Sequence record: MN794232.1
Reading direction: 5' to 3' (one strand)
DNA: 64,000 nt
In this document: positions 43,914 through 60,360 of the stretch, piece after piece
Layout of the letters: each line of letters begins with the position of its first letter
Numbering within the stretch: position 1 is the stretch's first letter
Notes under the pieces: model-generated
Database searches by the model: none
Seen by the model: only the letters and a program-made list of their open reading frames with translations
What the model was told of the DNA's origin: nothing
Translations under genes and position numbers: made by a program

Positions 43914-44438
43914 CTATTTGCGCCCTTTACGATTTGCCTTATTTGCTTTTCTTTTTGCTCTACGCAATTCTTTGCGTTTTGCGATTTTGTCTGCACGTCT
44001 AACTGCATCATAATCCGCAGCACACGACGCAGCAAACGCATCAGGCTTGAAAACGGGTTCTTGACCCACGTATCCCAAGATAGTGCCCTTAGCTTCGTTA
44101 TACGCAACGTGTGAACGATGGGATGGATCTGGGTTGATGTCAACGTGAACTTCAAACCCACGAGTACCACACATTGGCTTAACACGCAGAGCAGTTTCAC
44201 CTGCTTTATAGACTTCATTCATCAAACGACTACGAATACCATCTTTACAAGACATGTACGCTGGTTCAGTTTCGATAGATTTGAATACTTGAGCGCCTTT
44301 ACTACCCTCAAGGTGAATGATGATTACAGTAGCGTAACTAATCATATCACTCTTACGCTTGCTATCACACCCAACATAAATCGTACTGTTCGGATGACTG
44401 TTATTGATAGCTGTTTCAATTGCTTCCCAATCGAACAT
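43914..44438 (-). CDS. RNase H-like YkuK (DUF458) family protein
   Basis: IYVGCDS, YATVIIIH, RLMNEV, EVHVDIN, KPDAFAASCAAD. Confidence 0.8.
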   Translation of the reverse strand: MFDWEAIETAINNSHPNSTIYVGCDSKRKSDMISYATVIIIHLEGSKGAQVFKSIETEPAYMSCKDGIRSRLMNEVYKAGETALRVKPMCGTRGFEVHVDINPDPSHRSHVAYNEAKGTILGYVGQEPVFKPDAFAASCAADYDAVRRADKIAKRKELRRAKRKANKANRKGRK

Positions 44439-44489
44439 TTTCACCTCTGTACAAAAAAAGGGCAGCACAATGCCGCCCTTATCACTTAT

Positions 44490-45929
44490 TTAAAAGCTGT
44501 AGCGATCAACGCCTACAGTTTTCAGCATGATCTTGACTGGCTCAAGCTCACCACCTAACAATGAAGTCAGGATAGATGGGCTACAACCCGATACCAGTGC
44601 AGTACCCGCTTCGCCAGCTTTAACCGGAACGTTGCCAAGACGACCACGAATGTTCCAGAAGACTAGTTGTGGCATTTCATAGCCAGCACGTGCGTACATA
44701 GCTTTGATTGCGTCGAAGTTTGCACGTTCGCCGCGACCGTACCAACCACCACCAGTATTTGCTTGGTCGAATTCCATGTCGCTCATGATAAGCAACTTAG
44801 TTGGCATTTCTTCTTGTGAAAGATTTGCACGTTTTGCACGCTCTAACAGAACGTTGAAGCACTTACCGATGTTTGTGCTCATGTCTTCACCTGAGCGATT
44901 CATGTTGTCAAGACGCTCTTTTAGTGAGCTACCGCGCAACTGGTGGAAGTGCGGATCGCTTGAGAACGAAATGAACTGATCTTTGAAGATTCCTTCATTG
45001 CGTTCAGCAACATAGATGCCAAGAGACATTGCAACTTGCTTACAAGTCACGCCAGAACGATCTGTACCTGCGTTGATTGGCGTGCTCATAGAGCCAGATA
45101 CGTCAACAACAGGGATGATGCGCTCATCAGAGCCTTCCATGTAGTTCGGCAGAGCTTTCCATTGCTCGTTCGCTACAGACGCATTGCCATGACTAACGCT
45201 CTTAACGACATCATATGGGAACAATGCACCAGCGTTGATCTTCGCTTCACCTTTTTGAAGTGACTCGATGTAGCTTGTGTAACGAGCAGAAGCGTTACGA
45301 CCGAATGCTTGTTGATAACGAGCAGACGCTACAGATGGCAACTTACCAAAGTCGATTGCATCCCATTCTTGCGCACACATCTTCTGTTCAACAGTGTCAG
45401 ACAAAAGTGCTAGAATCTTACGCCACTGCTTCGCAGTTACACCAAGAGACTTGATTGTGCGCTTGAACACATGACCGTTTTTGCTGTTTTCACGTGGGAA
45501 CCACTTAGCAGCAAGACTATTCTTGTCGTTTACAATCGCGTTTGACCACAATGTGATCGCGTCTTTCTCAAGTCTTGTACCGAACGCAGAAATCAAGTCG
45601 TCGAAACGACCTAGTTCTGGAATTTTCGACATTACAGCACGAGCTACGTCAGGCTGCTCATTACAAAGCTTAGTGAATAGAGTACGGAAAGTACCACGTT
45701 CACCCGCACCACCGCGAACATCACGAGACCACAAAAGAATGCGTGTCGCTAGTTCTGGGTTTTCTGCAAACGCACGACCGAACAGTGTTTTAGACTGATC
45801 GTTGCCACGCATAGCAGCAATACCGAAGAACAAGTTTAGACACTCGTTACCTGAAGTGCTGTGAGTAACTGCACCGTTTGCTGTACGTGAATCGTTTGAT
45901 TGCATAGCGTTCATAAATAGACTAGTCAT
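44490..45929 (-). CDS. TROVE-like DUF2828 / vWA protein (Ro60-related architecture)
   Basis: TANGA...SG..CLNLFF, RDVRGGAGER, AAKWFPR, MIDAS DVSGSM, MSTN, SDMEFD, VFWN; start set by GGAG SD. Confidence 0.8.
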   Translation of the reverse strand: MTSLFMNAMQSNDSRTANGAVTHSTSGNECLNLFFGIAAMRGNDQSKTLFGRAFAENPELATRILLWSRDVRGGAGERGTFRTLFTKLCNEQPDVARAVMSKIPELGRFDDLISAFGTRLEKDAITLWSNAIVNDKNSLAAKWFPRENSKNGHVFKRTIKSLGVTAKQWRKILALLSDTVEQKMCAQEWDAIDFGKLPSVASARYQQAFGRNASARYTSYIESLQKGEAKINAGALFPYDVVKSVSHGNASVANEQWKALPNYMEGSDERIIPVVDVSGSMSTPINAGTDRSGVTCKQVAMSLGIYVAERNEGIFKDQFISFSSDPHFHQLRGSSLKERLDNMNRSGEDMSTNIGKCFNVLLERAKRANLSQEEMPTKLLIMSDMEFDQANTGGGWYGRGERANFDAIKAMYARAGYEMPQLVFWNIRGRLGNVPVKAGEAGTALVSGCSPSILTSLLGGELEPVKIMLKTVGVDRYSF

Positions 45930-45962
45930 TGCTGTAAGCTCCATTATCAAGGATCAAAAAAT

Positions 45963-50102: not shown

Positions 50103-51818
50103 ATGAGTTCTATCAATTTACCTGGCGGAGGACAACCTCTACCAAAATACGTAGAAGAAGCGCCTGCAAATGGGTTGCTATATGGACGTAAAGATGAGAC
50201 ATGGGAGCCGATTCCTGAAGACTCACTAACGCCGTTTCCATTAGGTGCGACCCCTAATTCATTCGATGCAAGAACCGGCGACAGAGACGCAGCAATCGCT
50301 CTAAGAGACGCTCATGCATCAGAAAACCCGTCGTGGGTTGCGTTTTATGTAAACAACCCGACATCGGCGATTGACCTTGTATATGAAGACATTTCGGTTG
50401 GCGGAACCGTTGCTGAAAGACAAACGTATACAGGAACACAATGGATTTCACAGCGTATTGTTGAAGGCATACCAGGTCCGATTGGGCCATCAGGTGAAGG
50501 GTCAATTCCCCCATTCGCGTCGATTGCCGAGCGAGATTCATTCTTCGCGTCATCGGGGAATAAATCACTATTGAAAAAAGGTTTGCCTGTATTCGTTCAA
50601 GAATTTGAAGGTCGAGCAAGCTCATATTATTGGAGAGGCGAGACAAACCCAAATACGTACGATGCTTCTAAGTTCTCACTAGCCGCAGTTCAATCAGGGA
50701 ACGGTGATTTATACTTAGCAAATACGCATAGAATATCTTCGTCAGGACAGAATATAGCAGTAACTAATATCATCGACAACGTGAGCTTTCACCCCGTATG
50801 GCAGACATATGAAGAAGGGAATACTGCAACGGTACGTGTGCGTTCTATCGAGTCTGTCAATGAATACTCAGATAAATCAGCACAGATAACTAACCCAAGA
50901 TGGGAACTAATGCAGATGCCAAACAACAGAACGTTATACTCAGTTGTAGTTGATTTTGTCAATGCATACGCTGAAATTGATGTTGTCGTTTATAAAAACA
51001 CAGATGAATATTATCAAACTAAAATATTCGATATTACACCAGGAGAAGTTGATGTATTAATCGAGCCACCGTTTGACATTCGTTCAATGGACACACTTGA
51101 GATTGAGTTGCGCAACCCGAACTTAGATGTTGTAGTATGGGGTAACTTATCAACAGGCATCCCATGGAATAAACCAACAACACGTGATTTTACCGACGAG
51201 ACGGTTGTAATTCAATCTGATTTAGATGCAGTCGAAACAAGAGTAAGTGACATCGAAGCAAACGCGATTGTCATCGGGGATAATGTTTCTAAGCTGACAA
51301 ATGACGCGGGATATATTAGCGACAAAGACATCATTTTCCAGAAGAGCAATAATACAGGAACTAATGTGTTAACGCTAAACGGGGCAGGTGATGAGGGTAC
51401 TATCCCACTATCACAAACCGATGAAAACGGTGTGTTATTCGAATACTCGTCAACTACTGGCAATTTCAGACCGCTTGAAGATAAACCAATGCACATTAAA
51501 CTTAGAATAAGTATTGATCGTTCTGGGGGTGGGTCAAATCCTGAGATTATAACGTGGGTTGAATCAGCAGCGACAGACACGACAGTTCCTAATGCTTTCA
51601 CACAAGAAACATCGGCATTTCGCATGGATGACCTGCAAACCGACCGTACATTATTTTTAATTGATACGATTTTAAATATGAACTCAAGTCGTTATTATCG
51701 CATAAGACTTCGTAATTTAAACGGCGATAATTTTGATGTTGATACATTCGGCCCGTTTGCAACAAGTTCGGGTAATGATATTTTTGCACCCGCAGTTGAG
51801 TTTATGATTAGTAGATAA
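50103..51818 (+). CDS. fibre-like virion protein with N-terminal foldon-like motif
   Basis: YVEEAPANGLLYGRKDETW; GIPGPIGPSG; coiled coil; VSKLTNDAGY. Confidence 0.7.
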   Translation: MSSINLPGGGQPLPKYVEEAPANGLLYGRKDETWEPIPEDSLTPFPLGATPNSFDARTGDRDAAIALRDAHASENPSWVAFYVNNPTSAIDLVYEDISVGGTVAERQTYTGTQWISQRIVEGIPGPIGPSGEGSIPPFASIAERDSFFASSGNKSLLKKGLPVFVQEFEGRASSYYWRGETNPNTYDASKFSLAAVQSGNGDLYLANTHRISSSGQNIAVTNIIDNVSFHPVWQTYEEGNTATVRVRSIESVNEYSDKSAQITNPRWELMQMPNNRTLYSVVVDFVNAYAEIDVVVYKNTDEYYQTKIFDITPGEVDVLIEPPFDIRSMDTLEIELRNPNLDVVVWGNLSTGIPWNKPTTRDFTDETVVIQSDLDAVETRVSDIEANAIVIGDNVSKLTNDAGYISDKDIIFQKSNNTGTNVLTLNGAGDEGTIPLSQTDENGVLFEYSSTTGNFRPLEDKPMHIKLRISIDRSGGGSNPEIITWVESAATDTTVPNAFTQETSAFRMDDLQTDRTLFLIDTILNMNSSRYYRIRLRNLNGDNFDVDTFGPFATSSGNDIFAPAVEFMISR

Positions 51819-52149
51819 AAGAGCCTTTCGGCTCTTTTAATTTGCAGAAACAAAAAAACCTGCTCAAGGCAGGTTTAGATGTGCAATACACAGACATTCG
51901 AGAATTGTTTTATCGTCTTTCCTTAAATCTCAATTGACTATCTCGATGTTTCTCATCAAGAGAATACCCATGATTCGGCATGAGACCTATTTCGTTTTAC
52001 AGTACGAACACCGTCTTAATGGTCATTTCCTACCACGAGAATGCGACAGGCTCACGTCATCACTGAGAAAGCAGCTAGTGCGCCTCATTACTATTAAAGT
52101 TTGCTTCTTTGATTAGTAATAGTTGCTGTACAATGTCTTATTGCGAATT

Positions 52150-52238
52150 TGGCGGAGATACTGGGAATCGAACCCAGAGAACGCTATTAACGTCCGACAC
52201 CTTAGCAGGGTGCTGTCATACCTTTAGACCATATCTCC
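52150..52238 (-). tRNA. tRNA-Ser(GCT)
   Basis: cloverleaf, long variable arm, CCA. Confidence 0.93.
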
Positions 52239-52243
52239 GTAGA

Positions 52244-52423
52244 TTATTTTTTACCACGCTCTGCTTTGCTAATCTCGACAGCAGCGATTTGTGCGTTTGC
52301 TTCTTTCTCAGTATCATGAGTACCAAGTACTCTACCTTTAGATGAAAGAGCAACCCATTTGTCGCCACGCTTCTCGACTTTCTCAACAAGCTTGTGATAT
52401 TCATCAAATGTTTTAAGTTTCAT
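52244..52423 (-). CDS. 59-aa probable internal head protein (not in ORF track)
   Basis: MKLKTFDEYHKLVE...; GAGG RBS; TATAAATA at 52449-52456. Confidence 0.7.
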   Translation of the reverse strand: MKLKTFDEYHKLVEKVEKRGDKWVALSSKGRVLGTHDTEKEANAQIAAVEISKAERGKK

Positions 52424-52625
52424 GTGTCATCCCTCAGTTAGTTTATTGTATTTATAACTGAACGACTTTTAAACAGTGGCATGCTGCTCTCATGCTCAGA
52501 CACATATTTGCTCTTATTGCAGGCGTGTGCCACGCGCAGCGCAGATCCCTTTTGATAATTTAATGACCAGCGGGACTCTTAGCAGGTCTATTCACTCTCT
52601 TTCGATTCGCGTTGCTAAGTGAATT

Positions 52626-52702
52626 TGGTGCCCAACCCGAGATTCGAACTCGGAACTTCTAGTGTTTGAAACTAGCGACTCTGCCAATTGGCCTAGTTGG
52701 GC
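52626..52702 (-). tRNA. tRNA-Leu(CAA), short variable loop
   Basis: CTAGT-TTCAAAC-ACTAG; CCA. Confidence 0.88.
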
Positions 52703-52706
52703 TTGA

Positions 52707-52809
52707 ATAAGCTGCCGCAACTCTTTAATCCCTAACACCTGTCAGCTTTCGCTCGGCTGAGACCGTTTTTCAACGGCGGTAGTCTAGCTTCGTATAGAAC
52801 GCGGCTTAT
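52707..52809 (-). ncRNA. candidate structured RNA
   Basis: closing ATAAGC/GCTTAT stem; two GAAA-capped hairpins. Confidence 0.45.
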
Positions 52810-52818
52810 GCTAGAGTT

Positions 52819-52895
52819 TGGTACGCACGGGCGGATTCGAACCGCCATCCCTGAGATTTTAAGCCTCATGCCTCTGCCAATTGGACCACGTGCGC
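52819..52895 (-). tRNA. tRNA-Leu(TAA), short variable loop
   Basis: TGAGG-CTTAAAA-TCTCA; CCA. Confidence 0.88.
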
Positions 52896-52897
52896 AT

Positions 52898-52971
52898 TGG
52901 AGCCCGAACAGAGAATCGAACTCTGACCGCGGGATTTGCAATCCCTCATACTTCCATTATACGATTCGGGC
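52898..52971 (-). tRNA. tRNA-Cys(GCA)
   Basis: cloverleaf, CCA. Confidence 0.92.
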
Positions 52972-53074
52972 AATATGTTAGTGCATTGCATGAGCTACTG
53001 GCGATCTTAATGGGTATTTCAAGCATTCAGAATTCCCATGCGCTACTACAATGCTTTTTTCGCTAAATGCACTT

Positions 53075-53151
53075 TGGGGTGACAGACGGGGATCGAACCC
53101 GCATCTTCCGGAATCACAACCCGGGGGTATTTCCACTTCACCCACTGCCAC
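53075..53151 (-). tRNA. tRNA-His(GTG)
   Basis: cloverleaf, C73; position -1 is T. Confidence 0.9.
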
Positions 53152-53205
53152 ACCAAAGTACACTTTGGGATGTTTACGACATCAAACGAATGCGCTCCCT
53201 GTGCA

Positions 53206-53448
53206 TTAATCAGATTTCTTTAAGTAGATACTATCAGGCGATAATTCTCTTGTAAACATATTTTTGAAATAAATTTCAATGTCTGCTTCAGTTGTTGAAG
53301 ACTCAATTTCAAGAGCACGCTCAAGAATCTTGTTACGCTTAAACCCAGCTCGCCAACAATCAAACATAAGTCTGTCCATACGTTGAAGCTTTTCAATTTG
53401 ATTCGAGTTTACGTATTCGTGAGTTTCAAGTAATGCAGGCGTATTCAT
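53206..53448 (-). CDS. hypothetical protein
   Basis: ORF between tRNAs, start MNTP. Confidence 0.55.
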   Translation of the reverse strand: MNTPALLETHEYVNSNQIEKLQRMDRLMFDCWRAGFKRNKILERALEIESSTTEADIEIYFKNMFTRELSPDSIYLKKSD

Positions 53449-53472
53449 AATATAGTTCTCATCATAAAAGAA

Positions 53473-53546
53473 TGGTAGCCCCTGACGGATTCGAGCCGTC
53501 TCTACTTCTGTGTAAAAGAAGCGTACTCCCATTATACTAAGGGGCT
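53473..53546 (-). tRNA. tRNA-Val(TAC)
   Basis: cloverleaf, CCA. Confidence 0.9.
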
Positions 53547-53552
53547 AGAATT

Positions 53553-53628
53553 TGGAGCGTCTACACGGATTCGAACCGAGACGAGTGACTTGGAAGGACA
53601 CCATGCTACCAATTGACATCATAGACGC
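53553..53628 (-). tRNA. tRNA-Gly(TCC)
   Basis: cloverleaf, CCA. Confidence 0.9.
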
Positions 53629-54053
53629 ATTGTTAATCTGAAGCATCAAACAAATCACGTATAGCACGTAGATTTGTAAGCTCTACTGTAAGTGTTCTAA
53701 TAAAGAACGGGTTGGTCTCTTTTGCGAGACGTTTTTCAACATCACGAATTTTATCGCGAATGTTGCCCTTGCTTAGTGTAAAGTAGTCATGCTTCTTTCT
53801 CTTCGTTTGAGGTTAAAATCAGGTTAACGTGCTCATTCACTTCTTGCTCGATTTGCCACTGTTCGTAGACATACTCAGCGTATAAAAGTGTTTCGTACAT
53901 GTTCACCCTTTTTGAATGAATTTAAGCTTACGTTTAAGCTTGCCACGAGATTTATGTCGCTTACACAGTTTAGCACCGTGATAGCTATGATATTGATAAA
54001 AGCTAGTTAGCTTCTTATACAATGATTTCATGCATACCTCATGTTTTTGAATT

Positions 54054-54129
54054 TGGTGGAGACACCGATACTCGAAATCGGATCTAATGGCTTATGAGAC
54101 CATTGCTCTACCACTTGAGCTACATCTCC
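54054..54129 (-). tRNA. tRNA-Met(CAT), probably elongator
   Basis: cloverleaf, CCA. Confidence 0.85.
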
Positions 54130-54155
54130 AAAATCAGTAATTAACTCATTTAATC

Positions 54156-54475
54156 GCACACGGGCTGACACCATATATTTATGGTCTGAGCGAGGAACCA
54201 CATAGTGGGTACTGTCACCTCATCTTAGTTTTGATTGTTTTACATGACGATAACTAGAAACGTTCATAATAATGCCACGCGATACTTCCTGTATCACGGC
54301 TAACTGAGTTAGCAAACTTGCCTTGCGGCTGTAGTGTCGTTTCCGACGAATTAAGTACAGACAATACCGAAGTGTTTTTTCGTCTTTTGCATTAATCGGA
54401 GTTGACTAGCTTATTGATTCTCAACAAGCAAATATCGTCTGTTTCAGCGACGCGCCTATCTGACTATTTCTAGGC
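54156..54475 (-). ncRNA. candidate large structured ncRNA (about 320 nt)
   Basis: no ORF; at least 8 hairpins incl. C(UUCG)G, GAAA and GCAA tetraloops. Confidence 0.6.
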
Positions 54476-54576
54476 AGAGAGAATCTTTCCTTTCAAGCTG
54501 CGCCGAAGCACTACCCAGGTTAAGATCATCACTTCTTTTAAGTAATTTTCAATTGTTTGCTGTATATTGTCTCTCT
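54476..54576 (-). ncRNA. CAGCAA-module RNA G
   Basis: AGAGAGA/TCTCTCT closing stem, ATACAGCAAACAAT. Confidence 0.6.
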
Positions 54577-54634
54577 AATCATACTCATGATATGCCGAAG
54601 CAAAGTATCATTCGCCGCATGATAGAGCTTAATT

Positions 54635-54710
54635 TGGCATCCCCAGAGGGATTTGAACCCACAACCCACGACTTAGAAGGTCGTTGCTCTTCCAATTGAG
54701 CTATGAGGAC
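54635..54710 (-). tRNA. tRNA-Arg(TCT)
   Basis: cloverleaf, CCA. Confidence 0.93.
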
Positions 54711-54786
54711 ATTAAAAGAATTCGATCCATGAGCTATTGCGCAGACGATGGTAGTAAAGAGACTCTGCACTCATGTGATCGAAATT

Positions 54787-54861
54787 TGGTGGACACGCAG
54801 GGAGTCGAACCCTATCCTCCTCATTGCAAGTGAGGCGCTTTCCCAATTAAGCTAACGGCCC
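54787..54861 (-). tRNA. tRNA-Ala(TGC), imperfect acceptor stem
   Basis: G3-U70 present; stem pairs only with a bulge. Confidence 0.75.
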
Positions 54862-54871
54862 AATGTTCGTT

Positions 54872-55081
54872 TTACAACTGTGTGATTGAGATATGATCCC
54901 ATCCGTATAAACCTTCAAGTTCTTCAATAGGCTCACAAACAATGTCAGAAATATATTCAGCAACTTTTGCTTCAATTTCTTCATCAGATAGCTTTTCATC
55001 AATTGCAAAAGCATCTTCATTATTGTTGCCACCGAAATAGCCGCCAATGTCATATTCACACCATACTGAAATATAGTTCAT
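54872..55081 (-). CDS. hypothetical acidic protein
   Basis: GAGAATAACATG; MNYISVWCEYD. Confidence 0.65.
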   Translation of the reverse strand: MNYISVWCEYDIGGYFGGNNNEDAFAIDEKLSDEEIEAKVAEYISDIVCEPIEELEGLYGWDHISITQL

Positions 55082-55105
55082 GTTATTCTCACAGTTGTTT
55101 GAAAA

Positions 55106-55181
55106 TGGTGCCCTGACACGGATTTGAACCGCGAACCTGCTCATTACAAGTGAGCTGCACTGCCAGTTGTGCTATCAGGGC
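55106..55181 (-). tRNA. tRNA-Thr(TGT)
   Basis: cloverleaf, CCA. Confidence 0.93.
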
Positions 55182-55187
55182 GTTACT

Positions 55188-55300
55188 GAGTGTTATTACT
55201 TGCGTCGTCCAGACCAGAGATACCAACTCTGAAAGGGAATCGAACCCCAAACATTTCTTTTCGTAAGAAGAATATTAGTAATTGTTTGCTGAAAACACTC
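55188..55300 (-). ncRNA. circularly permuted tRNA mimic (YrlA-like) RNA F
   Basis: terminal stem, CAGCAAACA bulge, inner stem, variable-like hairpin, T arm, capped acceptor hairpin, D-like hairpin. Confidence 0.75.
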
Positions 55301-55309
55301 TTCGGTATT

Positions 55310-55383
55310 TGGCAGGGGATAACGGATTCGAACCGGTACTGCGTGAGTCAAAGTCACGTATGCTGCCTTTACATCAATCCCCT
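55310..55383 (-). tRNA. tRNA-Gln(TTG)
   Basis: cloverleaf, CCA. Confidence 0.92.
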
Positions 55384-55402
55384 ATTATTCTTAAATTATC
55401 TT

Positions 55403-55478
55403 TGGCGGAACCGACGGGGCTTGAACCCGCTTCCTTTCCCGTGACAGGGGAATATGCACCCAGTTACACCTCGGCTCC
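55403..55478 (-). tRNA. tRNA-Asp(GTC)
   Basis: cloverleaf, CCA. Confidence 0.93.
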
Positions 55479-55550
55479 CCAAAGACAACTTAAAGTAGTT
55501 GCTTTGTTTTTTTTTCAAGTTCACACTTAACGGCAGTGACTCTCCGAATT

Positions 55551-55626
55551 TGGCGGACCGCCCGAGACTCGAACTCGGAACTCCTCGCTTAACAGGCGAG
55601 CACTCTAACCATTGAGTTAGCGATCC
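55551..55626 (-). tRNA. tRNA-Asn(GTT)
   Basis: cloverleaf, CCA. Confidence 0.93.
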
Positions 55627-56000
55627 ATATTCTTTTGTAATGCGTGTTCTTCACGATGGCAGTTAGAACAAAGCATAATGCACTTATCTAACTCAGTTTC
55701 GATTCTCGACCATGATATAGTCTGACTAGAGATACCGAAATCTTTCTCGTTTGGATCAAGATGATGAAACTCTAATGCTTCAATGCATCTATCATACCCG
55801 CATCGTTCACAACAACCACCTTTATATTCAACGGCTCTTAGTTTAGCACGCTTTCTATAAGAAATGACTGCTTCTTTATTCTTTCGTTTTCGTTCAGCAT
55901 CAGTGTGCTTTCGTCGATTCTTACCGTTGTATAAACCAGCACATCGACGACTACAGAATTTATTAAGTGCGTCTGCACCACACTCTAAGCATTTATTCAT
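55617..56000 (-). mobile_element. HNH endonuclease in tRNA cluster
   Basis: CLEC..CSRRC; CERCG...LEFHHLDP...LCSNCHREEH. Confidence 0.85.
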
Positions 56001-56144
56001 TTTTTGAGTTACCTATTTAAGTTTAAAAGATAACTCAGTGATAAAGTGTTTAGGCGCCACATTCGTAAGTGAATGACTCTATTACTACTTAGCAATTACA
56101 TTCAAGCGTTACCAAGAATCATGCCACGTAGCTTTAAATTAAAC

Positions 56145-56202
56145 AGCAATCCTTTTCTCTTTTTGCAAATAAAAGTTTTGTATTGTTTGCTGAAAGATTG
56201 CT
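56145..56202 (-). ncRNA. minimal CAGCAA-module RNA H
   Basis: AGCAATC/GATTGCT stem, TTTCAGCAAACAAT. Confidence 0.55.
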
Positions 56203-56208
56203 TAATTC

Positions 56209-56282
56209 TGGCAGGGACATAGAGATTCGAACTCTAACGAACGGGTTTGGAATCCGCCATGCTGCCGTTACATCATGTCCCT
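56209..56282 (-). tRNA. tRNA-Trp(CCA)
   Basis: cloverleaf, CCA. Confidence 0.9.
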
Positions 56283-56288
56283 AAAATT

Positions 56289-56362
56289 TGGTAGCCCCAG
56301 ACAGACTCGAACTGTCAACGTGCGATTATCGGTCGCGTGTTTTACCGTTAAACTATGGAGCT
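56289..56362 (-). tRNA. tRNA-Ile(GAT), C at position 33
   Basis: loop CCGATAA. Confidence 0.85.
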
Positions 56363-56426
56363 AAAGTGAGCACATTTCAGTGCTCGTGTTAATCGGTTAA
56401 GTGACTAAACTTCCCGGTTAACTAAT

Positions 56427-56525
56427 TGGCGGAAGACTAGGGATTCGAACCCTAACATCACCTCCCGGTGACCGACGGTTTTCAAGACCGTTGCCGCTAC
56501 CCAGAATCTTTCGGCTAAGCCTTCC
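56427..56525 (-). tRNA. tRNA-Ser(TGA), enlarged D loop
   Basis: 99 nt, long variable arm, CCA. Confidence 0.88.
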
Positions 56526-56532
56526 ATTAATT

Positions 56533-56608
56533 TGGTAGCGAGTGCCAGAATCGAACTGACCTAAACTAGCTTATGAGACTAGTGAGTTCACCAGAACTCT
56601 AACTCGCA
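56533..56608 (-). tRNA. tRNA-Met(CAT), initiator-like
   Basis: 1:72 mismatch and A11-U24; lacks the three G-C anticodon-stem pairs. Confidence 0.75.
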
Positions 56609-56710
56609 ATTATTCAACAGCTTGCGTTCTTTGGTCTGTTTATCGCTGTCTGAACTGAGTTCGCCGAGCGATCAATAGATTAAGTTGAATTGCAGTATGC
56701 AAGCTAAATT

Positions 56711-56796
56711 TGGTGGAGCGTAGAGGAATCGAACCTCTCTTCCCATTACGGGACACGGATTTACAGTCCGCTGCCGCACCTTGCGGCTTACGCTCC
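56711..56796 (-). tRNA. tRNA-Tyr(GTA)
   Basis: cloverleaf, variable arm, CCA. Confidence 0.93.
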
Positions 56797-56802
56797 AGAA
56801 TT

Positions 56803-56876
56803 TGGTACTCGATACGGGAGTCGAACCCGTCCTACTTCCTTGAAAGGGAAGTGACCTACCGATAGTCGAATCGAGC
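56803..56876 (-). tRNA. tRNA-Glu(TTC)
   Basis: cloverleaf, CCA. Confidence 0.92.
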
Positions 56877-56939
56877 ATTAAATTGTATATTGATTTGCAA
56901 GCTAATCAACTCGCAAAGCGATACACAATGTATCTAATT

Positions 56940-57016
56940 TGGTACGCCGCCCTGGACTCGAACCAGACACCTGAGAGTTAAAAGCTCCCTGCTCTTCCAT
57001 GATGAGCTACCGACGC
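56940..57016 (-). tRNA. tRNA-Lys(TTT)
   Basis: cloverleaf, CCA. Confidence 0.92.
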
Positions 57017-57027
57017 ATTATAAAATC

Positions 57028-57102
57028 TGGTGGGTCGCAAGAGATTCGAACTCTCACCGTTCTGGTTAAAAGCCAGATGTACTACCGTTATACGAACGAC
57101 CC
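57028..57102 (-). tRNA. tRNA-Lys(TTT), second copy
   Basis: cloverleaf, CCA. Confidence 0.92.
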
Positions 57103-57108
57103 AGAATG

Positions 57109-57183
57109 TGGTGCACCCCCTCGGAATCGAACCGAGCACTGCGGGACTTCAATCCGTCGCTTTTCCTGATAAGCTAAGGGTGC
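57109..57183 (-). tRNA. tRNA-Phe(GAA), distorted anticodon arm
   Basis: GGA-TTGAAG-TCC gives a 6-nt loop, or a mismatched stem with a 7-nt loop. Confidence 0.65.
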
Positions 57184-57184
57184 A

Positions 57185-57262
57185 TGGTACGCAAGAAGAG
57201 ATTCGAACTCTTAACTTCTGGTTTCTAAGACCAGTGCCTCTGCCAGATTGGGCTACTTGCGC
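57185..57262 (-). tRNA. tRNA-Leu(TAG), short variable loop
   Basis: CTGGT-CTTAGAA-ACCAG; CCA. Confidence 0.88.
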
Positions 57263-57297
57263 ATTGTTTGTTTTTGAACGTTACTTCGTTCTTCTTC

Positions 57298-57418
57298 ATT
57301 GTACATGATGTTTATATCGTTGTAAACATCTTTTTTGAAAAACTTTTCATTAACTTTTGAATGATATTTCGCTTTTCTCTATTGTACATGATGTTTATAT
57401 CGTTGTAAACATCTTTTT
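57298..57418 (-). repeat. exact 38-bp direct repeat = tandem promoters
   Basis: 57298-57335 and 57381-57418; TTTACA-17-TACAAT with 8-bp inverted repeat. Confidence 0.85.
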
Positions 57419-57574
57419 AAATTTATTTTGAAGAACTTAACGTTTTCATTTTTCTATGTGTTAATCTTAACACTCGCTCAAGACATCTTAAACACTAATT
57501 TGTGAAAAAGTTCGTTAAATTCTATCATCACGACAGTACTTAACGAGATACGGTCCTAAGCGTATCAAATTAAT

Positions 57575-57700
57575 TCAGAATGGTGAGACTTGAACTCACT
57601 TCGAGTAATAGCGTAAACTAACAGTTGTTGCCAGAGGCTATCAATTATTCTCTACCGAGTATGTTGCAACTCTGCATTTCCCCATTTCTAGGCATTCTGA
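57575..57700 (-). ncRNA. tRNA-like RNA E (acceptor + T arm, expanded core, no CCA)
   Basis: TCAGAATG/CATTCTGA; GTGAG-TTCAAGT-CTCAC. Confidence 0.6.
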
Positions 57701-57704
57701 AATA

Positions 57705-57780
57705 TGGCACCCCACAGAAGATTCGAACTTCTAACCTGCGCCTTCGTAGGACGCTGCTCTTCCAATTGAGCTAGTAGGGC
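57705..57780 (-). tRNA. tRNA-Arg(ACG)
   Basis: cloverleaf, CCA. Confidence 0.93.
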
Positions 57781-57787
57781 ATTAAAC

Positions 57788-57864
57788 TGGTCCGTGACAA
57801 GCGATTCGAACGCTTAACTTCTCCGCCCCAAACGGAGTACTCTACCAGATTGAGCTAGTCACGG
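57788..57864 (-). tRNA. tRNA-Pro(TGG)
   Basis: cloverleaf, CCA. Confidence 0.93.
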
Positions 57865-57873
57865 ATTTTAAAT

Positions 57874-57947
57874 TGGTCGGGACGAAGAGACTCGAACTCT
57901 TACCACATGCTCCCAAAGCATGAACGCTACCTTTACGCCACGTCCCG
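57874..57947 (-). tRNA. tRNA-Pro(TGG), second copy
   Basis: cloverleaf, CCA. Confidence 0.92.
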
Positions 57948-58079
57948 TTTGTTCTTTAACTTTGTTTATCATACTCTGCTTTCAAAGTACGTTAAACAAA
58001 ATTTTTGATTTTCTTTCGCCCATAAAAAAGGACGCTACGTGCGTCCTCAAGTATACTTCTATGTTATACTATTGGACTA

Positions 58080-58206
58080 CGTTTGTGGAGACCACTCTTG
58101 TTTCGCACACGGATTCGCTAGATACACAAATTCTGAGCGCAGAAAATCGCTGCGTAAAATCATATCAGAATGTGTATTCGAATGTGTCATGGAAACTCTC
58201 TAAACG
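58080..58206 (-). ncRNA. candidate rod-shaped ncRNA
   Basis: nested stems CGTTT/AAACG, ATACACA/TGTGTAT, TTCTGA/TCAGAA, CGCAG/CTGCG; downstream terminator at about 58025-58049. Confidence 0.5.
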
Positions 58207-58315
58207 TTAAAATAAAAATGTTTTTGTTTGTATAATAGTACTTATAACACCAAATTTGACGATTTGCGGTATTTTCGCAGAAAATTGAAAAAAAAATCAA
58301 CTTTCTGCGATTTTC

Positions 58316-58561
58316 TTATCGACCTAGGTGTTTTCGCTTGTTCATTTCAACGAGGATTTCATCGTTGTAATGACGGTTCAGTTCAACATACTTCTTGTGC
58401 TGATCTGAAGTCAACTCGTTGGTGTCATTCAGATGTTTCAAGAATCCAAGAGGTTTGCGAAACGACTTGCGATATTCGTTCAGACGCTCGTCCGTTAGAT
58501 TATGCAGTTGTTTCGGAGTCAGTAACGTTTTATTGATGTCAAAACTCATGTTGTACCTCAC
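58316..58561 (-). CDS. hypothetical protein
   Basis: GAGG RBS before MSFD. Confidence 0.6.
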   Translation of the reverse strand: MRYNMSFDINKTLLTPKQLHNLTDERLNEYRKSFRKPLGFLKHLNDTNELTSDQHKKYVELNRHYNDEILVEMNKRKHLGR

Positions 58562-58574
58562 TTGTTATTAAAAT

Positions 58575-58690
58575 TGGTAGTCGGGGCTGGATTCGAACCA
58601 GCGACCACGTGCTTAACAGGCAATTGAAGGAGTGCTGGAGCGATACTTGACAGTATCATTCTTCGTGCTCTACCACTGAGCTACCCGACT
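58575..58690 (-). ncRNA. tRNA-Asn-like RNA A with 41-nt insertion in anticodon stem
   Basis: removing the insert gives a perfect 75-nt tRNA-Asn(GTT) with CCA. Confidence 0.85.
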
Positions 58691-58695
58691 ATGAA

Positions 58696-59217
58696 TTATT
58701 TAACTTTGAACTTCAAATTACGCCAGTCAAAGTTTCGTTTGTTCTTTGTGTTGTAGAACGTGCCCCAATCAATAGCAATCGGACAGTTCTTACTACCTAC
58801 ACGAGCGATAAAGACATCGTGAGTCTCGCTGTAACGCTCTCTAAGCTCTTTTAAACGCTTATCGTAGTTAGCGATATACTCTGCACACGCTTTGTTGTAA
58901 GCTGCTTTAGAGAAGCGTTCGTCACTCGAAAATACATTACCCAGATAAGGTCGAATAACACGAACTCGTTCTTTAGACCAACCCATACTAAAGCTGTTTT
59001 CAATCTCACCTGAGATTTCACCAGTCTTCTTACATCTAGCAAGAATGACCCAGCAACGTTCACGCCGAAAATCTTTTCGTACGTACACGTTAACGTGCTT
59101 GTCAATGTACTCTTGATAACGAGCGTTATACTCAGCACGCAGTTTATTGCGCACTTCAGGCGACATTGCAGCCCGTTCTTCTTTCGAAAACGCTTGTGCG
59201 AATTTCAATGGTTTCAT
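58696..59217 (-). CDS. hypothetical basic protein
   Basis: GAGGA RBS, start MKPL. Confidence 0.65.
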   Translation of the reverse strand: MKPLKFAQAFSKEERAAMSPEVRNKLRAEYNARYQEYIDKHVNVYVRKDFRRERCWVILARCKKTGEISGEIENSFSMGWSKERVRVIRPYLGNVFSSDERFSKAAYNKACAEYIANYDKRLKELRERYSETHDVFIARVGSKNCPIAIDWGTFYNTKNKRNFDWRNLKFKVK

Positions 59218-59230
59218 TATAATTTCCTCT

Positions 59231-59470
59231 TGGCGCCGCTCGTGTGAATCGAACACACGTCAAACACAACACCTCGTCCACCCAATTAGAGTTTCGAAGT
59301 AAGAGCTAATCAGCATTTCGGAGCAGTCGAGCGTTATTTCTACGAGTGAGCTTTCGACAACTCACACGCACTTTCTACCCGGTCCCAGTGATTCGGTACC
59401 AACGCAGGTTGCGAACCTACGTCTGCACTAATGCTGGGAAAACACTGCGTATTGTACACCAGTTAGCGGC
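59231..59470 (-). ncRNA. 240-nt RNA I with tRNA-like ends and CCA
   Basis: GCCGCT/AGCGGC-G-CCA; GTGTG-TTCGATT-CACAC. Confidence 0.75.
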
Positions 59471-59472
59471 AT

Positions 59473-59703
59473 TTAAAGATAGCTATCAAAGACAGCATCA
59501 TCAACTTCTTCAATATTGATGTCAGCGTAACACTCATTCGCAATTGCTTGAATTTCATCTATTGAAACTGTACCTGCGTACAATACAACAGCGTCGTTCG
59601 GAATCACGACATCACACATGTATTTGTTAAACATTGCAGTTCTGAAATCAGAATCAACAGAGTAACCGTGCATTGATGTGATAACTAGCAATTTATGTGA
59701 CAT
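59473..59703 (-). CDS. hypothetical protein
   Basis: GAGGA RBS; upstream TTGACA promoter. Confidence 0.65.
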   Translation of the reverse strand: MSHKLLVITSMHGYSVDSDFRTAMFNKYMCDVVIPNDAVVLYAGTVSIDEIQAIANECYADINIEEVDDAVFDSYL

Positions 59704-59782
59704 AATGTTTTCCTCGTGTAGTTGATAATGTGTATACTACACGTTGATGAAACGCCTGTCAACAACTTTTTCAAATTATTTT

Positions 59783-59859
59783 TGGTAGCCCCTCTCGGAT
59801 TCGAACCGAGAACCTGACGATTATGAGTCGTCTGCTACTACCGTTACAGCTAAGGGGCT
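59783..59859 (-). tRNA. tRNA-Ile2-like (CAT)
   Basis: AGCCCCT acceptor and GACTCATAATCG arm resemble enterobacterial Ile2. Confidence 0.8.
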
Positions 59860-60226
59860 ATCGTTCTAGAAATCTACCGACTTTAGCAGCGAAGATGTTT
59901 GCTTCTTCTGCAATCAAAGCAGTTGATTTCATTTGATGAAAAGCGTCTTGTTGATGCAGAACATCTAGTTTACCAGCGCATTTCATCAGTTCTTTTACTG
60001 ATTGCATAATCTCAATGTTATCAAGCTGACTCGTGTCAGGGTGATGATTGAGACTATCCAAGACAGGGAGTACTTGTTGATAGTAACCCATGCCGATGAA
60101 GTTTATCATAAGTCTGTACTGCATTTCAACAGCAAATGTACAATATTTTCGAAGATTGCGTTTTACAATCTCACAGCGATGTAAGATACAATCAAGTTCG
60201 TCATTTATGTCATCAAACTTATTCAT
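59858..60226 (-). CDS. hypothetical protein
   Basis: GAGG RBS, start MNKFDD. Confidence 0.6.
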   Translation of the reverse strand: MNKFDDINDELDCILHRCEIVKRNLRKYCTFAVEMQYRLMINFIGMGYYQQVLPVLDSLNHHPDTSQLDNIEIMQSVKELMKCAGKLDVLHQQDAFHQMKSTALIAEEANIFAAKVGRFLER

Positions 60227-60240
60227 AAAACCTCGAAAAT

Positions 60241-60360
60241 TGGTGGAGAGTGATGGATTTGAACCACCGACCAAAAGATTTACCAGTTAAGGTTTGCAGC
60301 ATGAATGCTTGTCAGTATTCTTTAACATTCTTTTGCTCTACCAGACTGAGCTAACTCTCC
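60241..60360 (-). ncRNA. tRNA-like RNA B with 50-nt structured anticodon loop
   Basis: canonical acceptor, D and T arms and CCA; AAAGA/TCTTT stem encloses module. Confidence 0.85.

What the first reader, a model, noticed from the sequence alone, without database searches (positions are those of the whole stretch)
54476..56202. Stand-alone module RNAs G (54476-54576) and H (56145-56202)
Seen: both begin with a 7-bp stem immediately followed by CAGCAAACAAT, the same 11-mer as in F, and close on the complementary strand, but have no tRNA arms. H is only 58 nt. G abuts the large structured RNA at 54475 and could be its 5' handle. Inference: minimal decoys or adaptors for the TROVE-like protein.
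Basis: partly seen in the sequence, partly recalled or inferred. Interest (0 to 1): 0.65.

Follow-up and report, generated by a model that had tools for sequence, protein, structure and literature searches.

The report
Small partner RNAs of phage Ro60-like protein
H is a real 58-base RNA gene of a widespread, undescribed family that in very different phages sits beside the gene of a ring-shaped Ro60-like RNA-binding protein, so it is probably that protein's minimal partner RNA; G is not a separate RNA but the front end of a 214-base RNA with the same docking piece.

Summary
The window is Vibrio phage VH1_2019, a KVP40-type phage. Its tRNA cluster is on the minus strand.

H (56145-56202, minus) is confirmed. 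It has a 7-9 bp terminal helix, a short linker, single-stranded CAGCAA and an A/U-rich loop. I built a covariance model only from RNAs next to DUF2828 genes in distant metagenomic phages. It hits H end to end (35.5 bits, E 6e-6), the only significant hit in 64 kb.

Genome-wide, every model hit in four cultured phages (Staphylococcus, Listeria, Mycobacterium, Campylobacter) lies within 300 nt of their DUF2828 gene. The window's DUF2828/DUF7788 protein (44493-45929, minus) folds like Ro60; its top 13 PDB matches are all Ro60/TROVE.

G is only partly right. The covarying closure makes a 214-nt RNA (54572 to 54359), with a paralogue at 52138 to 51892.

Best reading: Y-RNA-like partners of a divergent phage Ro60. 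H is the minimal form. Binding and expression are untested.

H resembles Dictyostelium Class I RNAs (Rfam 27-33 bits) but stays below the threshold of 41.5.

Earlier follow-ups in this scan reached the same system on related KVP40-type DNA. I found no paper on it.

The parts
56145..56202 (-). H RNA core: terminal helix, short linker, CAGCAA, A/U-rich loop, 3' helix strand (58 nt)
   Evidence: Model R1 hits it end to end (35.5 bits, E 6e-6). It is conserved in 30 Vibrio phage records. RNAalifold and pair counts agree on the helix.
56194..56202 (-). H helix, 5' strand (7 bp core AGCAAUC plus 2 weaker pairs)
   Evidence: 99.1% of cells are paired. One pair switches C-G to U-A between clades.
56187..56192 (-). 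H motif CAGCAA (CUGCAA in phage F86)
56145..56153 (-). H helix, 3' strand; followed by invariant GU, giving the ending CUGU
56133..56208 (-). Whole conserved H unit, starting 6 nt after tRNA-Trp. In phiST2-type phages it fills the 78-nt spacer between tRNA-Trp and tRNA-Asn.
   Evidence: Excision by tRNA processing is inferred.
54359..54572 (-). G-type RNA, 214 nt.
   Evidence: A closing 7-nt complement is found in all 16 phages examined, in three sequence versions. Consensus fold, 13 sequences. Pair counts. The MFE fold closes the same way, z -2.7.
54565..54572 (-). G-RNA helix P1, 5' strand AGACAAUA
   Evidence: Compensatory versions: AGAUAAU/AUUAUCU (1.081.O) and AGGCAAU/AUUGCCU (F86).
54557..54562 (-). 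G-RNA motif CAGCAA, 2-3 nt after P1
54359..54370 (-). G-RNA 3' strands of P2 (UCGG, 54370-54367) and P1 (UAUUGUCU, 54366-54359)
54396..54399 (-). G-RNA helix P2, 5' strand CCGA; stacks on P1
   Evidence: The pair at columns 215/247 is C-G in 9, G-U in 3 and G-C in 1 sequence.
44490..45929 (-). Gene of the Ro60-like protein (Pfam DUF2828 + DUF7788), the presumed protein partner
   Evidence: Pfam. AlphaFold2 model pLDDT 81. Top 13 PDB matches are all Ro60/TROVE, E 1.6e-8 to 6e-4.
55188..55300 (-). F RNA: same module (GAGUGUU/AACACUC, linker, CAGCAA) enclosing a T-arm-like element. Related, not re-examined in depth.
51892..52138 (-). Paralogue of the G-type RNA, just 3' of tRNA-Ser(gct): P1 AGACAUU/AAUGUCU, P2 GAGA/UCUC, same conserved 3' domain

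Best explanation
H is a small non-coding RNA gene. Its ends form a 7-9 bp helix, and CNGCAA is presented single-stranded a few bases after the 5' strand. The rest is a variable A/U-rich loop.

This 'module' defines a family of RNAs that phages encode together with a divergent Ro60-type protein (DUF2828/DUF7788: HEAT-repeat ring plus vWA domain). By analogy with Ro60 and its Y RNAs, the protein made from window 44493-45929 most likely docks on the helix-plus-CNGCAA module.

H is the module alone, like the short YrlB RNA of Salmonella beside the tRNA-like YrlA. It would occupy, stabilise or gate the protein without bringing a second function. G is the same module closing a 214-nt multi-helix RNA, whose invariant 3' domain would bring another partner or target to the protein.

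In KVP40-type phages these RNAs lie inside the tRNA operon. They are probably cut out of the tRNA precursor by the tRNA-processing enzymes.

Shown: the structures, their conservation and covariation, the gene-RNA linkage, and the Ro60 fold.
Inferred: physical binding, processing and the regulatory role.
For: (1) Model R1 was built only from 18 RNAs lying next to DUF2828 genes in metagenomic phages whose protein is 41-54% identical to the window's. It finds nothing else significant in 128 kb of searched strand.

(2) Linkage by descriptor scan. Of 75 metagenomic DUF2828 loci, 42 have a strict module (helix of 7+ bp, 2-3 nt, CNGCAA) within 500 nt downstream on the gene's strand. My estimate of the chance expectation is about 1. 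Hits number 92 on the gene strand and 30 on the opposite strand, against about 21 per strand in shuffles.

(3) Linkage by model. R1 gives 74 hits in these loci, 69 of them on the gene strand.

(4) Cultured phages of Staphylococcus, Listeria, Campylobacter, Mycobacterium and Salmonella all show R1 hits beside the gene, on its strand. In whole-genome scans of the first four, all 6 hits with E<=0.01 in 434 kb lie within 300 nt of the gene.

(5) Helix sequences differ completely between lineages while the motif stays the same.

(6) No protein-coding neighbour of the window's gene recurs in the metagenomic loci. The RNA is the only conserved companion.

(7) The protein model's 13 best PDB matches are Ro60 proteins over their full length. 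The best is the Thermus phage phiLo Ro60, which was shown to bind two phage-encoded Y-like RNAs and host PNPase (PMC12135203).

(8) In Mycobacterium phage Kingsolomon the gene is followed by three RNAs: a minimal module, a module enclosing a YrlA-like tRNA mimic (Rfam YrlA 37.9 bits, full-length match) and another minimal module. This is the same minimal-plus-elaborate mix as H with F and G.

(9) In KVP40-type phages the gene's own 5' leader carries the motif at the start codon. In six of eight it is a complete module enclosing the Shine-Dalgarno sequence and the AUG. That is what an autoregulatory binding site would look like.

(10) G-RNA closure: 98.7% paired, with 3 compensatory pairs.
Against: - No binding or expression data exist. 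No RNA sequencing run holds this region.
- In this phage H and G lie 10 and 8.5 kb from the protein gene, not beside it.
- H shows only one compensatory pair within the KVP40 clade. Cross-lineage helix variation was partly selected by my own descriptor, although R1 also recovered non-seed members.
- The docking motif (CNGCAA) differs from that of known Y RNAs (GNCGAAN0-1G), so the Ro60 analogy could mislead about which surface binds, or whether binding occurs at all.
- A sequence profile of the long second RNAs of metagenomic loci does not detect G. G's kinship to them is architectural only.
- The 5'-leader motif is not general outside KVP40-type phages (3 of 48 leaders).
Confidence: 0.62

Rival explanations
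1. The module RNAs are substrates or cis-acting signals rather than cofactors. For example, they could be mimics of misfolded RNA ends that the ring threads. Or they could be elements controlling stability or expression of the DUF2828 transcript, with the copies in the tRNA cluster acting only as processing spacers.
For: - In most lineages the module lies directly 3' (or 5') of the gene, often before a terminator, so it could be part of the mRNA.
- The motif sits on the gene's own translation start in KVP40-type phages.
- Ro60 is known to bind misfolded RNAs as well as Y RNAs (PMC12135203).
Against: - In KVP40-type phages H, G, F and E are 6-10 kb from the gene, inside a tRNA operon, and still strictly conserved.
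- Many loci have promoter-like -10 boxes a few bases before the module's first base, and tandem arrays of two or three modules. This suggests discrete RNA genes.
- A spacer role does not explain an invariant CNGCAA.
Confidence: 0.2
2. H belongs to the same RNA class as the Class I RNAs of Dictyostelium (common origin or transfer). Its real partner would then be of the kind that binds Class I RNAs (the RRM protein Rnp1A/CIBP or others), not necessarily DUF2828.
For: - Rfam RF01414 matches H homologues end to end: 27.5 bits (VH1), 28.4 (phiST2), 29.1 (F86) and 33.4 (nt-1). It also gives 28.2 bits for a metagenomic module.
- It is the best non-tRNA family hit for each.
- Shared features are a length near 60 nt, low G+C, a short terminal stem, UUACAGCAA next to the 5' strand, and a 5' G paired to the C of a 3' CUGU.
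Against: - All scores are below Rfam's threshold of 41.5.
- Most metagenomic and cultured-phage modules score lower still.
- A short motif plus a stem can converge.
- The published search found no Class I RNAs outside Dictyostelia (PMC7919456).
- No RRM protein is linked to the phage RNAs, and I could not test whether Dictyostelium has a DUF2828 protein.
Confidence: 0.13
3. G and H are chance repeats or decayed remnants (for example of tRNA genes or mobile elements) with no function.
For: Single-sequence folding energies are not significant (z -1.4 and -1.8). The region is A/T-rich, with homing-endonuclease insertions nearby.
Against: - The same 11-mer occurs three times exactly on one strand.
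- There are compensatory changes.
- H is retained while its flanks are rearranged.
- An independent model recognises it.
- Genome-wide, model hits fall only next to the gene.
Confidence: 0.03

Closest known systems
Bacterial Ro60 (Rsr) with Y RNAs YrlA and YrlB (Chen et al. 2014, PMC4201824)
   Same: - A ring-shaped Ro60-fold protein is encoded with small RNAs on the same strand.
- The RNA ends form a helix, with a conserved motif on the 5' strand.
- A short RNA without a tRNA-like domain coexists with a longer tRNA-like one.
- A YrlA-like domain is actually found inside one of these phage RNAs.
   Different: - Pfam's TROVE model does not recognise the protein (it hits DUF2828/DUF7788).
- The motif is CNGCAA after a 2-3 nt linker, not GNCGAAN0-1G.
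- H and G get no YrlA or Y_RNA hit.
- In KVP40-type phages the RNAs lie in the tRNA cluster, 8-10 kb from the gene.
Thermus phage phiLo Ro60 with Yrl1 and Yrl2 (PMC12135203; PDB 9KOP, 9L5Y)
   Same: It is a phage-encoded Ro60 and the best structural match of the window's protein (E 1.6e-8). It has two adjacent phage-encoded partner RNAs. Binding and a complex with host PNPase were shown experimentally.
   Different: It is a canonical TROVE protein, and its RNAs were found through a CGAA motif. Sequence identity to the window's protein is about 16% in the structural alignment.
Class I RNAs of Dictyostelium (Rfam RF01414; PMC7919456)
   Same: About 60 nt, low G+C, a short stem joining the ends, the conserved motif ...UUACAGCAA next to the 5' strand, a variable remainder, and a 5' G paired to the C of a 3' CUGU.
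   Different: They are eukaryotic nuclear genes with their own upstream promoter element, and their known binder is an RRM protein. The phage RNAs stay below the Rfam threshold, and homology is not shown.
Stable small RNAs (species 1 and 2, rnaC/rnaD) in the tRNA cluster of phage T4 (from my own knowledge, not tested here)
   Same: Non-tRNA stable RNAs co-transcribed and processed with phage tRNAs in a related phage family; their function is unknown.
   Different: No sequence or structure comparison was made. I did not check whether T4 has a DUF2828 gene.

Membership tests
DUF2828-linked CNGCAA-module RNAs (family defined here by model R1) | A terminal helix of 6-9 bp joins the 5' and 3' ends | tested here: met
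   H: 7-9 bp, 99% paired. G-RNA: 8 bp P1, 98% paired with compensatory changes.
DUF2828-linked CNGCAA-module RNAs (family defined here by model R1) | CNGCAA lies 2-3 nt after the 5' strand of the helix | tested here: met
   H: UUU then CAGCAA. G-RNA: (A)UA then CAGCAA. Variants CUGCAA and CCGCAA occur in relatives.
DUF2828-linked CNGCAA-module RNAs (family defined here by model R1) | Significant end-to-end match to the model built from gene-adjacent RNAs of other lineages | tested here: met
   H: 35.5 bits, E 6e-6. Homologues: 42.1 and 33.5 bits. G matches only with its 5' half (17.3 bits, E 0.13), because its 3' strand is 200 nt away.
DUF2828-linked CNGCAA-module RNAs (family defined here by model R1) | A DUF2828/DUF7788 gene is present in the same genome | tested here: met
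   The gene is in the window at 44490-45929. It is present in all five related phages tested.
Y RNA, YrlA type (Rfam RF02553; Chen et al. 2014) | 5' motif GNCGAAN0-1G | tested here: not met
   The motif is absent from H and G; CNGCAA stands in its place.
Y RNA, YrlA type (Rfam RF02553; Chen et al. 2014) | tRNA-like domain (T arm, D arm) | tested here: not met
   There is no tRNA or YrlA hit in 56145-56202 or 54359-54572.
Y RNA, YrlA type (Rfam RF02553; Chen et al. 2014) | Encoded within 4 kb of the Ro60 gene on the same strand | tested here: not met
   Same strand, but H is 10.2 kb and G 8.4 kb from the gene in this phage. The criterion is met by family members in other lineages.
Dictyostelium Class I RNA (Rfam RF01414) | Score at or above the curated threshold (41.5 bits) | tested here: not met
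   27.5 to 33.4 bits for H homologues.
Dictyostelium Class I RNA (Rfam RF01414) | 42-65 nt, a short stem joining the ends, a 5' G paired to the C of a 3' CUGU | tested here: met
   H is 58 nt, has the stem, and has G...CUGU invariant in 13 phages.
Dictyostelium Class I RNA (Rfam RF01414) | Conserved 11-nt motif next to the 5' strand | tested here: inconclusive
   The Rfam alignment matches UU-CAGCAA (VH1) or UUACAGCAA (phiST2 type) to the consensus CUUACAGCAA. The match is partial.
Dictyostelium Class I RNA (Rfam RF01414) | Own upstream promoter element (DUSE) about 60 nt upstream; found only in Dictyostelia | tested here: not met
   H starts 6 nt after a phage tRNA gene.
Ro60/TROVE protein (for the presumed protein partner) | HEAT-repeat ring plus vWA domain with a MIDAS motif | tested here: met
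   Full-length Foldseek matches to Ro60 structures, TM 0.5-0.6. D-x-S-x-S is invariant in 28 homologues.
Ro60/TROVE protein (for the presumed protein partner) | Match to the Pfam TROVE domain (PF05731) | tested here: not met
   Only DUF2828 and DUF7788 are hit. A profile search of PDB sequences gives TROVE chains only at E 0.24.

The most novel reading that the evidence does not exclude
The phage module RNAs and the Class I RNAs of Dictyostelium are one RNA class with one kind of partner. Class I RNAs, whose function has been open for two decades, would then be Y-RNA-like ligands of a Ro60-like protein in amoebae. A candidate is the uncharacterised pull-down protein DDB_G0281243 named in the preprint 10.1101/2020.04.05.026054. 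The class would have moved between phages or giant viruses and their amoebal surroundings.
Probability: 0.12. Interest if true: 0.9.

Novelty: new variant of a known kind. Interest (0 to 1): 0.74.

Why it matters
Ro60-Y RNA particles are known from animals, bacteria and a few phages. This work points to a much larger, unrecognised branch.
- DUF2828 proteins occur in 710 of about 50,700 cultured phage records, including Felix O1-like, Listeria P100-like, staphylococcal, campylobacter and mycobacterial phages. There are thousands of metagenomic clusters.
- Each comes with small RNAs that use a different docking motif.

H is the simplest member, so it is the natural reagent for showing what the protein recognises. 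The tRNA-like and long forms (F, G) suggest that the same handle delivers different cargo.

A working phage Ro60 system inside tRNA operons bears on how phages manage or protect RNA during infection. The experimentally studied Thermus phage Ro60 recruits host PNPase.

The close likeness to Dictyostelium Class I RNAs gives that orphan class a testable hypothesis.

Tried and rejected
- Single-sequence folding of H, G and F: z-scores -1.4, -1.8 and -0.5, not informative.
- Pfam TROVE search in 'own' genome: the assembly is not held.
- The 571-aa ORF at 50103-51818, which I first suspected to be the TROVE-like protein: no Pfam hit, not pursued.
- Sequence search of PDB with the protein or its profile: only designed armadillo repeats, with TROVE at E 0.24. 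The fold search was needed.
- RNA sequencing runs: none hold the region.
- nhmmer profile of the long second RNAs of metagenomic loci against the window: no hit on G. G's homology to them is not claimed.
- Conserved protein neighbours of the gene: none.
- 5'-leader motif as a general feature of DUF2828 genes: rejected outside KVP40-type phages (3 of 48).
- Possible pairing between G's 3' strand and F's 5' flank (16 of 18 bases in VH1): by my reading of the sequences it is not maintained in D482, F86 or 1.081.O. I regard it as paralogy or chance.
- MAFFT misaligned the 3' helix strands of some short modules. I therefore gave the structure by hand and did not use those alignments for covariation statistics.
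- Large protein word search and atlas search: these showed a huge, mostly viral family. They could not tell whether Dictyostelium has a member.
- Papers: no paper addresses DUF2828 function, none was found on KVP40 small RNAs, and nothing on DDB_G0281243 beyond the preprint. The supplement listing the phages of Chen et al. 2014 is not held.
Full report
**Where we are.** The window is Vibrio phage VH1_2019 (MN794232.1; record position = window + 124000), a KVP40-type Schizotequatrovirus. Positions 52150-60360 hold about 30 tRNA genes, all on the minus strand. Everything discussed here is read on that strand. Transcription runs from tRNA-Trp (56282-56209) through H, an HNH endonuclease gene (56000-55617), tRNA-Asn, Asp and Gln, then F, tRNA-Thr and tRNA-Arg (54710-54635), then G and on to tRNA-Met (54129-54054).

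**The observation.**
- CAGCAAACAAT occurs exactly three times, all on the minus strand, in G, F and H.
- H at 56145-56202 reads AGCAAUC-UUU-CAGCAA, then a 35-nt A/U-rich stretch, then GAUUGCU.
- The stem is therefore real, but the motif is 3 nt from it, not adjacent.
- Folding energies of single sequences are not significant, so I turned to comparison.

**H in relatives.**
- H is present in 30 Vibrio phage records.
- It is kept as a unit while its flanks change. In VH1 it starts 6 nt after tRNA-Trp and is followed by an inserted HNH gene. In KVP40 an extra annotated ORF lies between tRNA-Trp and H. In phiST2-type phages H simply fills the 78-nt spacer between tRNA-Trp and tRNA-Asn.
- On an alignment of 13 phages, RNAalifold predicts exactly one helix, the terminal one, with the rest open.
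- 99.1% of cells pair. One pair switches C-G to U-A between clades. Slid controls pair at 23-73%.
- The 3' strand is always followed by GU, giving an invariant CUGU ending.
- In phage F86 the motif is CUGCAA, both in H and in the G-type RNA.

**G re-read.**
- The helix that directly precedes AUA-CAGCAA is AGACAAU. Its complement AUUGUCU lies 200 nt downstream at 54365-54359.
- All 16 phages examined have such a closing pair, in three versions: AGACAAU/AUUGUCU, AGAUAAU/AUUAUCU (phage 1.081.O) and AGGCAAU/AUUGCCU (F86).
- Together with a stacked 4-bp helix (CCGA/UCGG) it is 98.7% paired, with three compensatory pairs. Slid controls pair at 24-47%.
- The consensus fold has 43 pairs, 14 of them with compensatory changes, in several internal hairpins. 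The minimum-energy fold of the 214-nt VH1 RNA closes the same way (z -2.7).
- G is therefore the 5' end of a 214-nt RNA (54572 to 54359). The CAGCAA motif sits in the junction next to the closing helix. The 3' domain is invariant (GAUAGUCAA ... AAAGACGA(A/U)AAAACA).
- A paralogue with covarying P1 (AGACAUU/AAUGUCU) and P2 (GAGA/UCUC) and the same 3' domain lies at 52138 to 51892.

**The protein.**
- Notes from earlier follow-ups of this scan pointed to a DUF2828 protein, and I checked this myself.
- The ORF at 44490-45929 (minus) matches Pfam DUF2828 and DUF7788 but not TROVE.
- I predicted its structure with an alignment of 28 homologues translated from fetched loci. The AlphaFold2 model has mean pLDDT 81 and pTM 0.80.
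- Its 13 best Foldseek matches in the PDB (E 1.6e-8 to 6e-4, full length, TM 0.5-0.6) are all Ro60 proteins: Thermus phage phiLo, Xenopus, Deinococcus and human. The next matches are unrelated.
- The vWA metal-site motif D-x-S-x-S is invariant.
- Homologues occur in 710 cultured phage records. Some are annotated 'Ro-like RNA binding protein'.

**Linkage of RNA and gene.**
- I fetched 78 non-KVP40 viral contigs encoding homologues that are 41-54% identical.
- A strict descriptor (helix of 7+ bp, 2-3 nt, CNGCAA, closure within 160 nt) gave 92 hits on the gene strand and 30 on the other. Shuffled sequence gives about 21 per strand.
- 42 of 75 loci have a hit within 500 nt downstream of the stop codon, where I estimate about one by chance. 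55 of 78 have one either upstream or downstream.
- The hits fall into a 53-65 nt class (H-like) and a 110-176 nt class.
- Helices differ entirely between lineages: UGGUUCC, AGAUUCC, GGGUUAU, AGGAAGG, AGGCUUC, GGGAUAA and others.
- I built covariance model R1 from 18 of the short ones, none from KVP40-type phages.
- In the window R1 finds H end to end at 56145-56202 (35.5 bits, E 6e-6). After that come only the motif halves of G, F and E (E 0.13 to 4).
- Over the 78 loci it gives 74 hits, 69 on the gene strand, including non-seed members.
- In cultured phages it finds:
  - three tandem modules right after the gene in a Staphylococcus phage;
  - three right before it in a Listeria phage;
  - one right before it in Campylobacter phage CPX;
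  - one after it in Mycobacterium phage Kingsolomon;
  - a weaker one in a Felix O1-like Salmonella phage.
- Scanning the whole genomes, all six hits with E<=0.01 in 434 kb lie within 300 nt of the gene.
- In whole KVP40-type genomes the only hits are the H loci: nt-1 42.1 bits, phiST2 33.5 bits, and a 25.3-bit hit in 1.081.O.
- No protein-coding neighbour of the window's gene recurs in the metagenomic loci.

**Minimal and elaborate forms together.**
- In many metagenomic loci the short RNA is followed at once by a second, 166-257 nt RNA. It has its own covarying terminal helix and UA-CAGCAA, then a terminator.
- In Kingsolomon the order is:
  1. a minimal module;
  2. a module enclosing a tRNA mimic that matches Rfam YrlA over its full length (37.9 bits, below the threshold of 69);
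  3. another minimal module;
  4. a terminator.
- This is the same mix as H (minimal), F (with a T arm) and G/E (long) in the window. It recalls the short YrlB beside the tRNA-like YrlA in Salmonella (PMC4201824).
- A sequence profile of the long metagenomic RNAs does not find G. I therefore claim shared architecture for G, not homology.

**A hint of direct recognition.**
- In KVP40, VH7D, phiST2, nt-1, 1.081.O and F86 the gene's 5' leader, behind an early-type promoter, is itself a 40-nt module: GACAUU, NUN, CAGCAA (CAGCAU in F86), a loop holding the Shine-Dalgarno sequence, and AAUGUC holding the AUG.
- VH1 and D482 have a different leader, which again has UUACAGCAA running into the AUG.
- This is the layout of an autogenous translational operator. 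It would make free module RNAs such as H competitors for the protein.
- It is not seen in other lineages (3 of 48 leaders).

**Known families.**
- YrlA-type Y RNAs are defined by proximity to Ro60, a GNCGAAN0-1G motif and a tRNA-like domain. H and G meet none of the RNA criteria and get no Rfam Y-RNA hit.
- The system works like Ro60-Y RNA but is a different branch.
- The nearest experimental precedent is the Thermus phage phiLo Ro60, which binds two adjacent Y-like RNAs and host PNPase (PMC12135203).
- Rfam's Dictyostelium Class I model matches H homologues end to end at 27.5-33.4 bits, below its threshold of 41.5.
- H shares the published defining features: size, G+C, terminal stem, motif next to the 5' strand, and G...CUGU ends. 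It lacks the promoter element, and the published search found the class only in Dictyostelia.
- I treat this as a striking resemblance of unknown meaning.

**Limits.** There are no expression or binding data, since no RNA run holds the region. The covariation within H is thin. The cross-lineage helix diversity was partly selected by my descriptor. The roles proposed (gate, stabiliser, titrator for H; tether for G) are inference from Ro60 biology.

**Prior notes and literature.** Earlier follow-ups in this scan described the same system on related KVP40-type DNA. My tests agree with them. They add the corrected boundaries of G, H's status as the family's canonical minimal form, the whole-genome specificity tests in cultured phages, the Kingsolomon array with a YrlA-like member, and the leader modules. 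I found no paper addressing DUF2828 function.

Noticed in passing
window 45927-45937 (minus); L017, L018, L097, L098, L100, L101 just upstream of the DUF2828 start codon: The Ro60-like gene's own 5' leader carries the motif at the start codon. In six KVP40-type phages it is a complete 40-nt module enclosing the Shine-Dalgarno sequence and the AUG. In VH1 and D482 it reads GGAGC-UUA-CAGCAAUG. This looks like an autoregulatory operator.
   Followed up: partly
window 51892-52138 (minus): A 247-nt paralogue of the G-type RNA lies directly after tRNA-Ser(gct). Its P1 and P2 covary with those of the G-RNA, and it has the same invariant 3' domain.
   Followed up: partly
An example is a hairpin GACCA...UGGUC followed by AGCCCGUGUGC-GAUUAAAU. 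It has no Rfam match and looks like a separate RNA.
   Followed up: no
window 54573-54634 (minus): The 62-nt spacer between tRNA-Arg and the G-type RNA contains a hairpin with a CGAA-type loop. It is conserved in KVP40-type phages but differs in nt-1 and CZ01.
   Followed up: no
window 54359-54385 versus 55290-55308 (minus): The 3' end of the G-type RNA (AAAACAC-UUCGGUAUU) is complementary to the 5' flank of F (AAUACCGAAGAGUGUUUU) in 16 of 18 bases. By my reading of the sequences this is not maintained in D482, F86 or 1.081.O.
   Followed up: partly
window 54790-54861 (minus): Rfam's tRNA model finds a tRNA-like gene here (45.7 bits) that ARAGORN does not. It is annotated as a pseudo-tRNA in KVP40.
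   Followed up: no
window 55617-56000 (minus): An HNH homing endonuclease gene is inserted between H and tRNA-Asn in VH1 and PG216. It is absent in KVP40, which instead has an extra annotated ORF between tRNA-Trp and H.
   Followed up: partly
L104 1474-2025 and 5858-7069 (Listeria phage LP-Mix_6.2): A ROOL RNA match (87.4 bits, threshold 99.1) lies just upstream of the three module RNAs and the DUF2828 gene. An RtcB-type RNA ligase gene lies 1.3 kb downstream, which recalls the rsr-yrlBA-rtcBA operon of Salmonella.
   Followed up: no
L103 4480-4800 (Mycobacterium phage Kingsolomon): After the 'Ro-like RNA binding protein' gene come three tandem RNAs, all starting UGGAC and ending GUCCAG, then a terminator. 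The middle one encloses a YrlA-like tRNA mimic.
   Followed up: yes
L059 2135-3930 and L071 3650-3880 (metagenomic viral contigs): Arrays of module RNAs enclosing a T arm followed by a D arm (permuted tRNA-like, as in F) lie directly upstream of the DUF2828 gene.
   Followed up: no
window 43914-44468 (minus): An RNase H-like (PF04308) gene lies directly downstream of the Ro60-like gene. This neighbourhood is not conserved in other lineages.
   Followed up: partly
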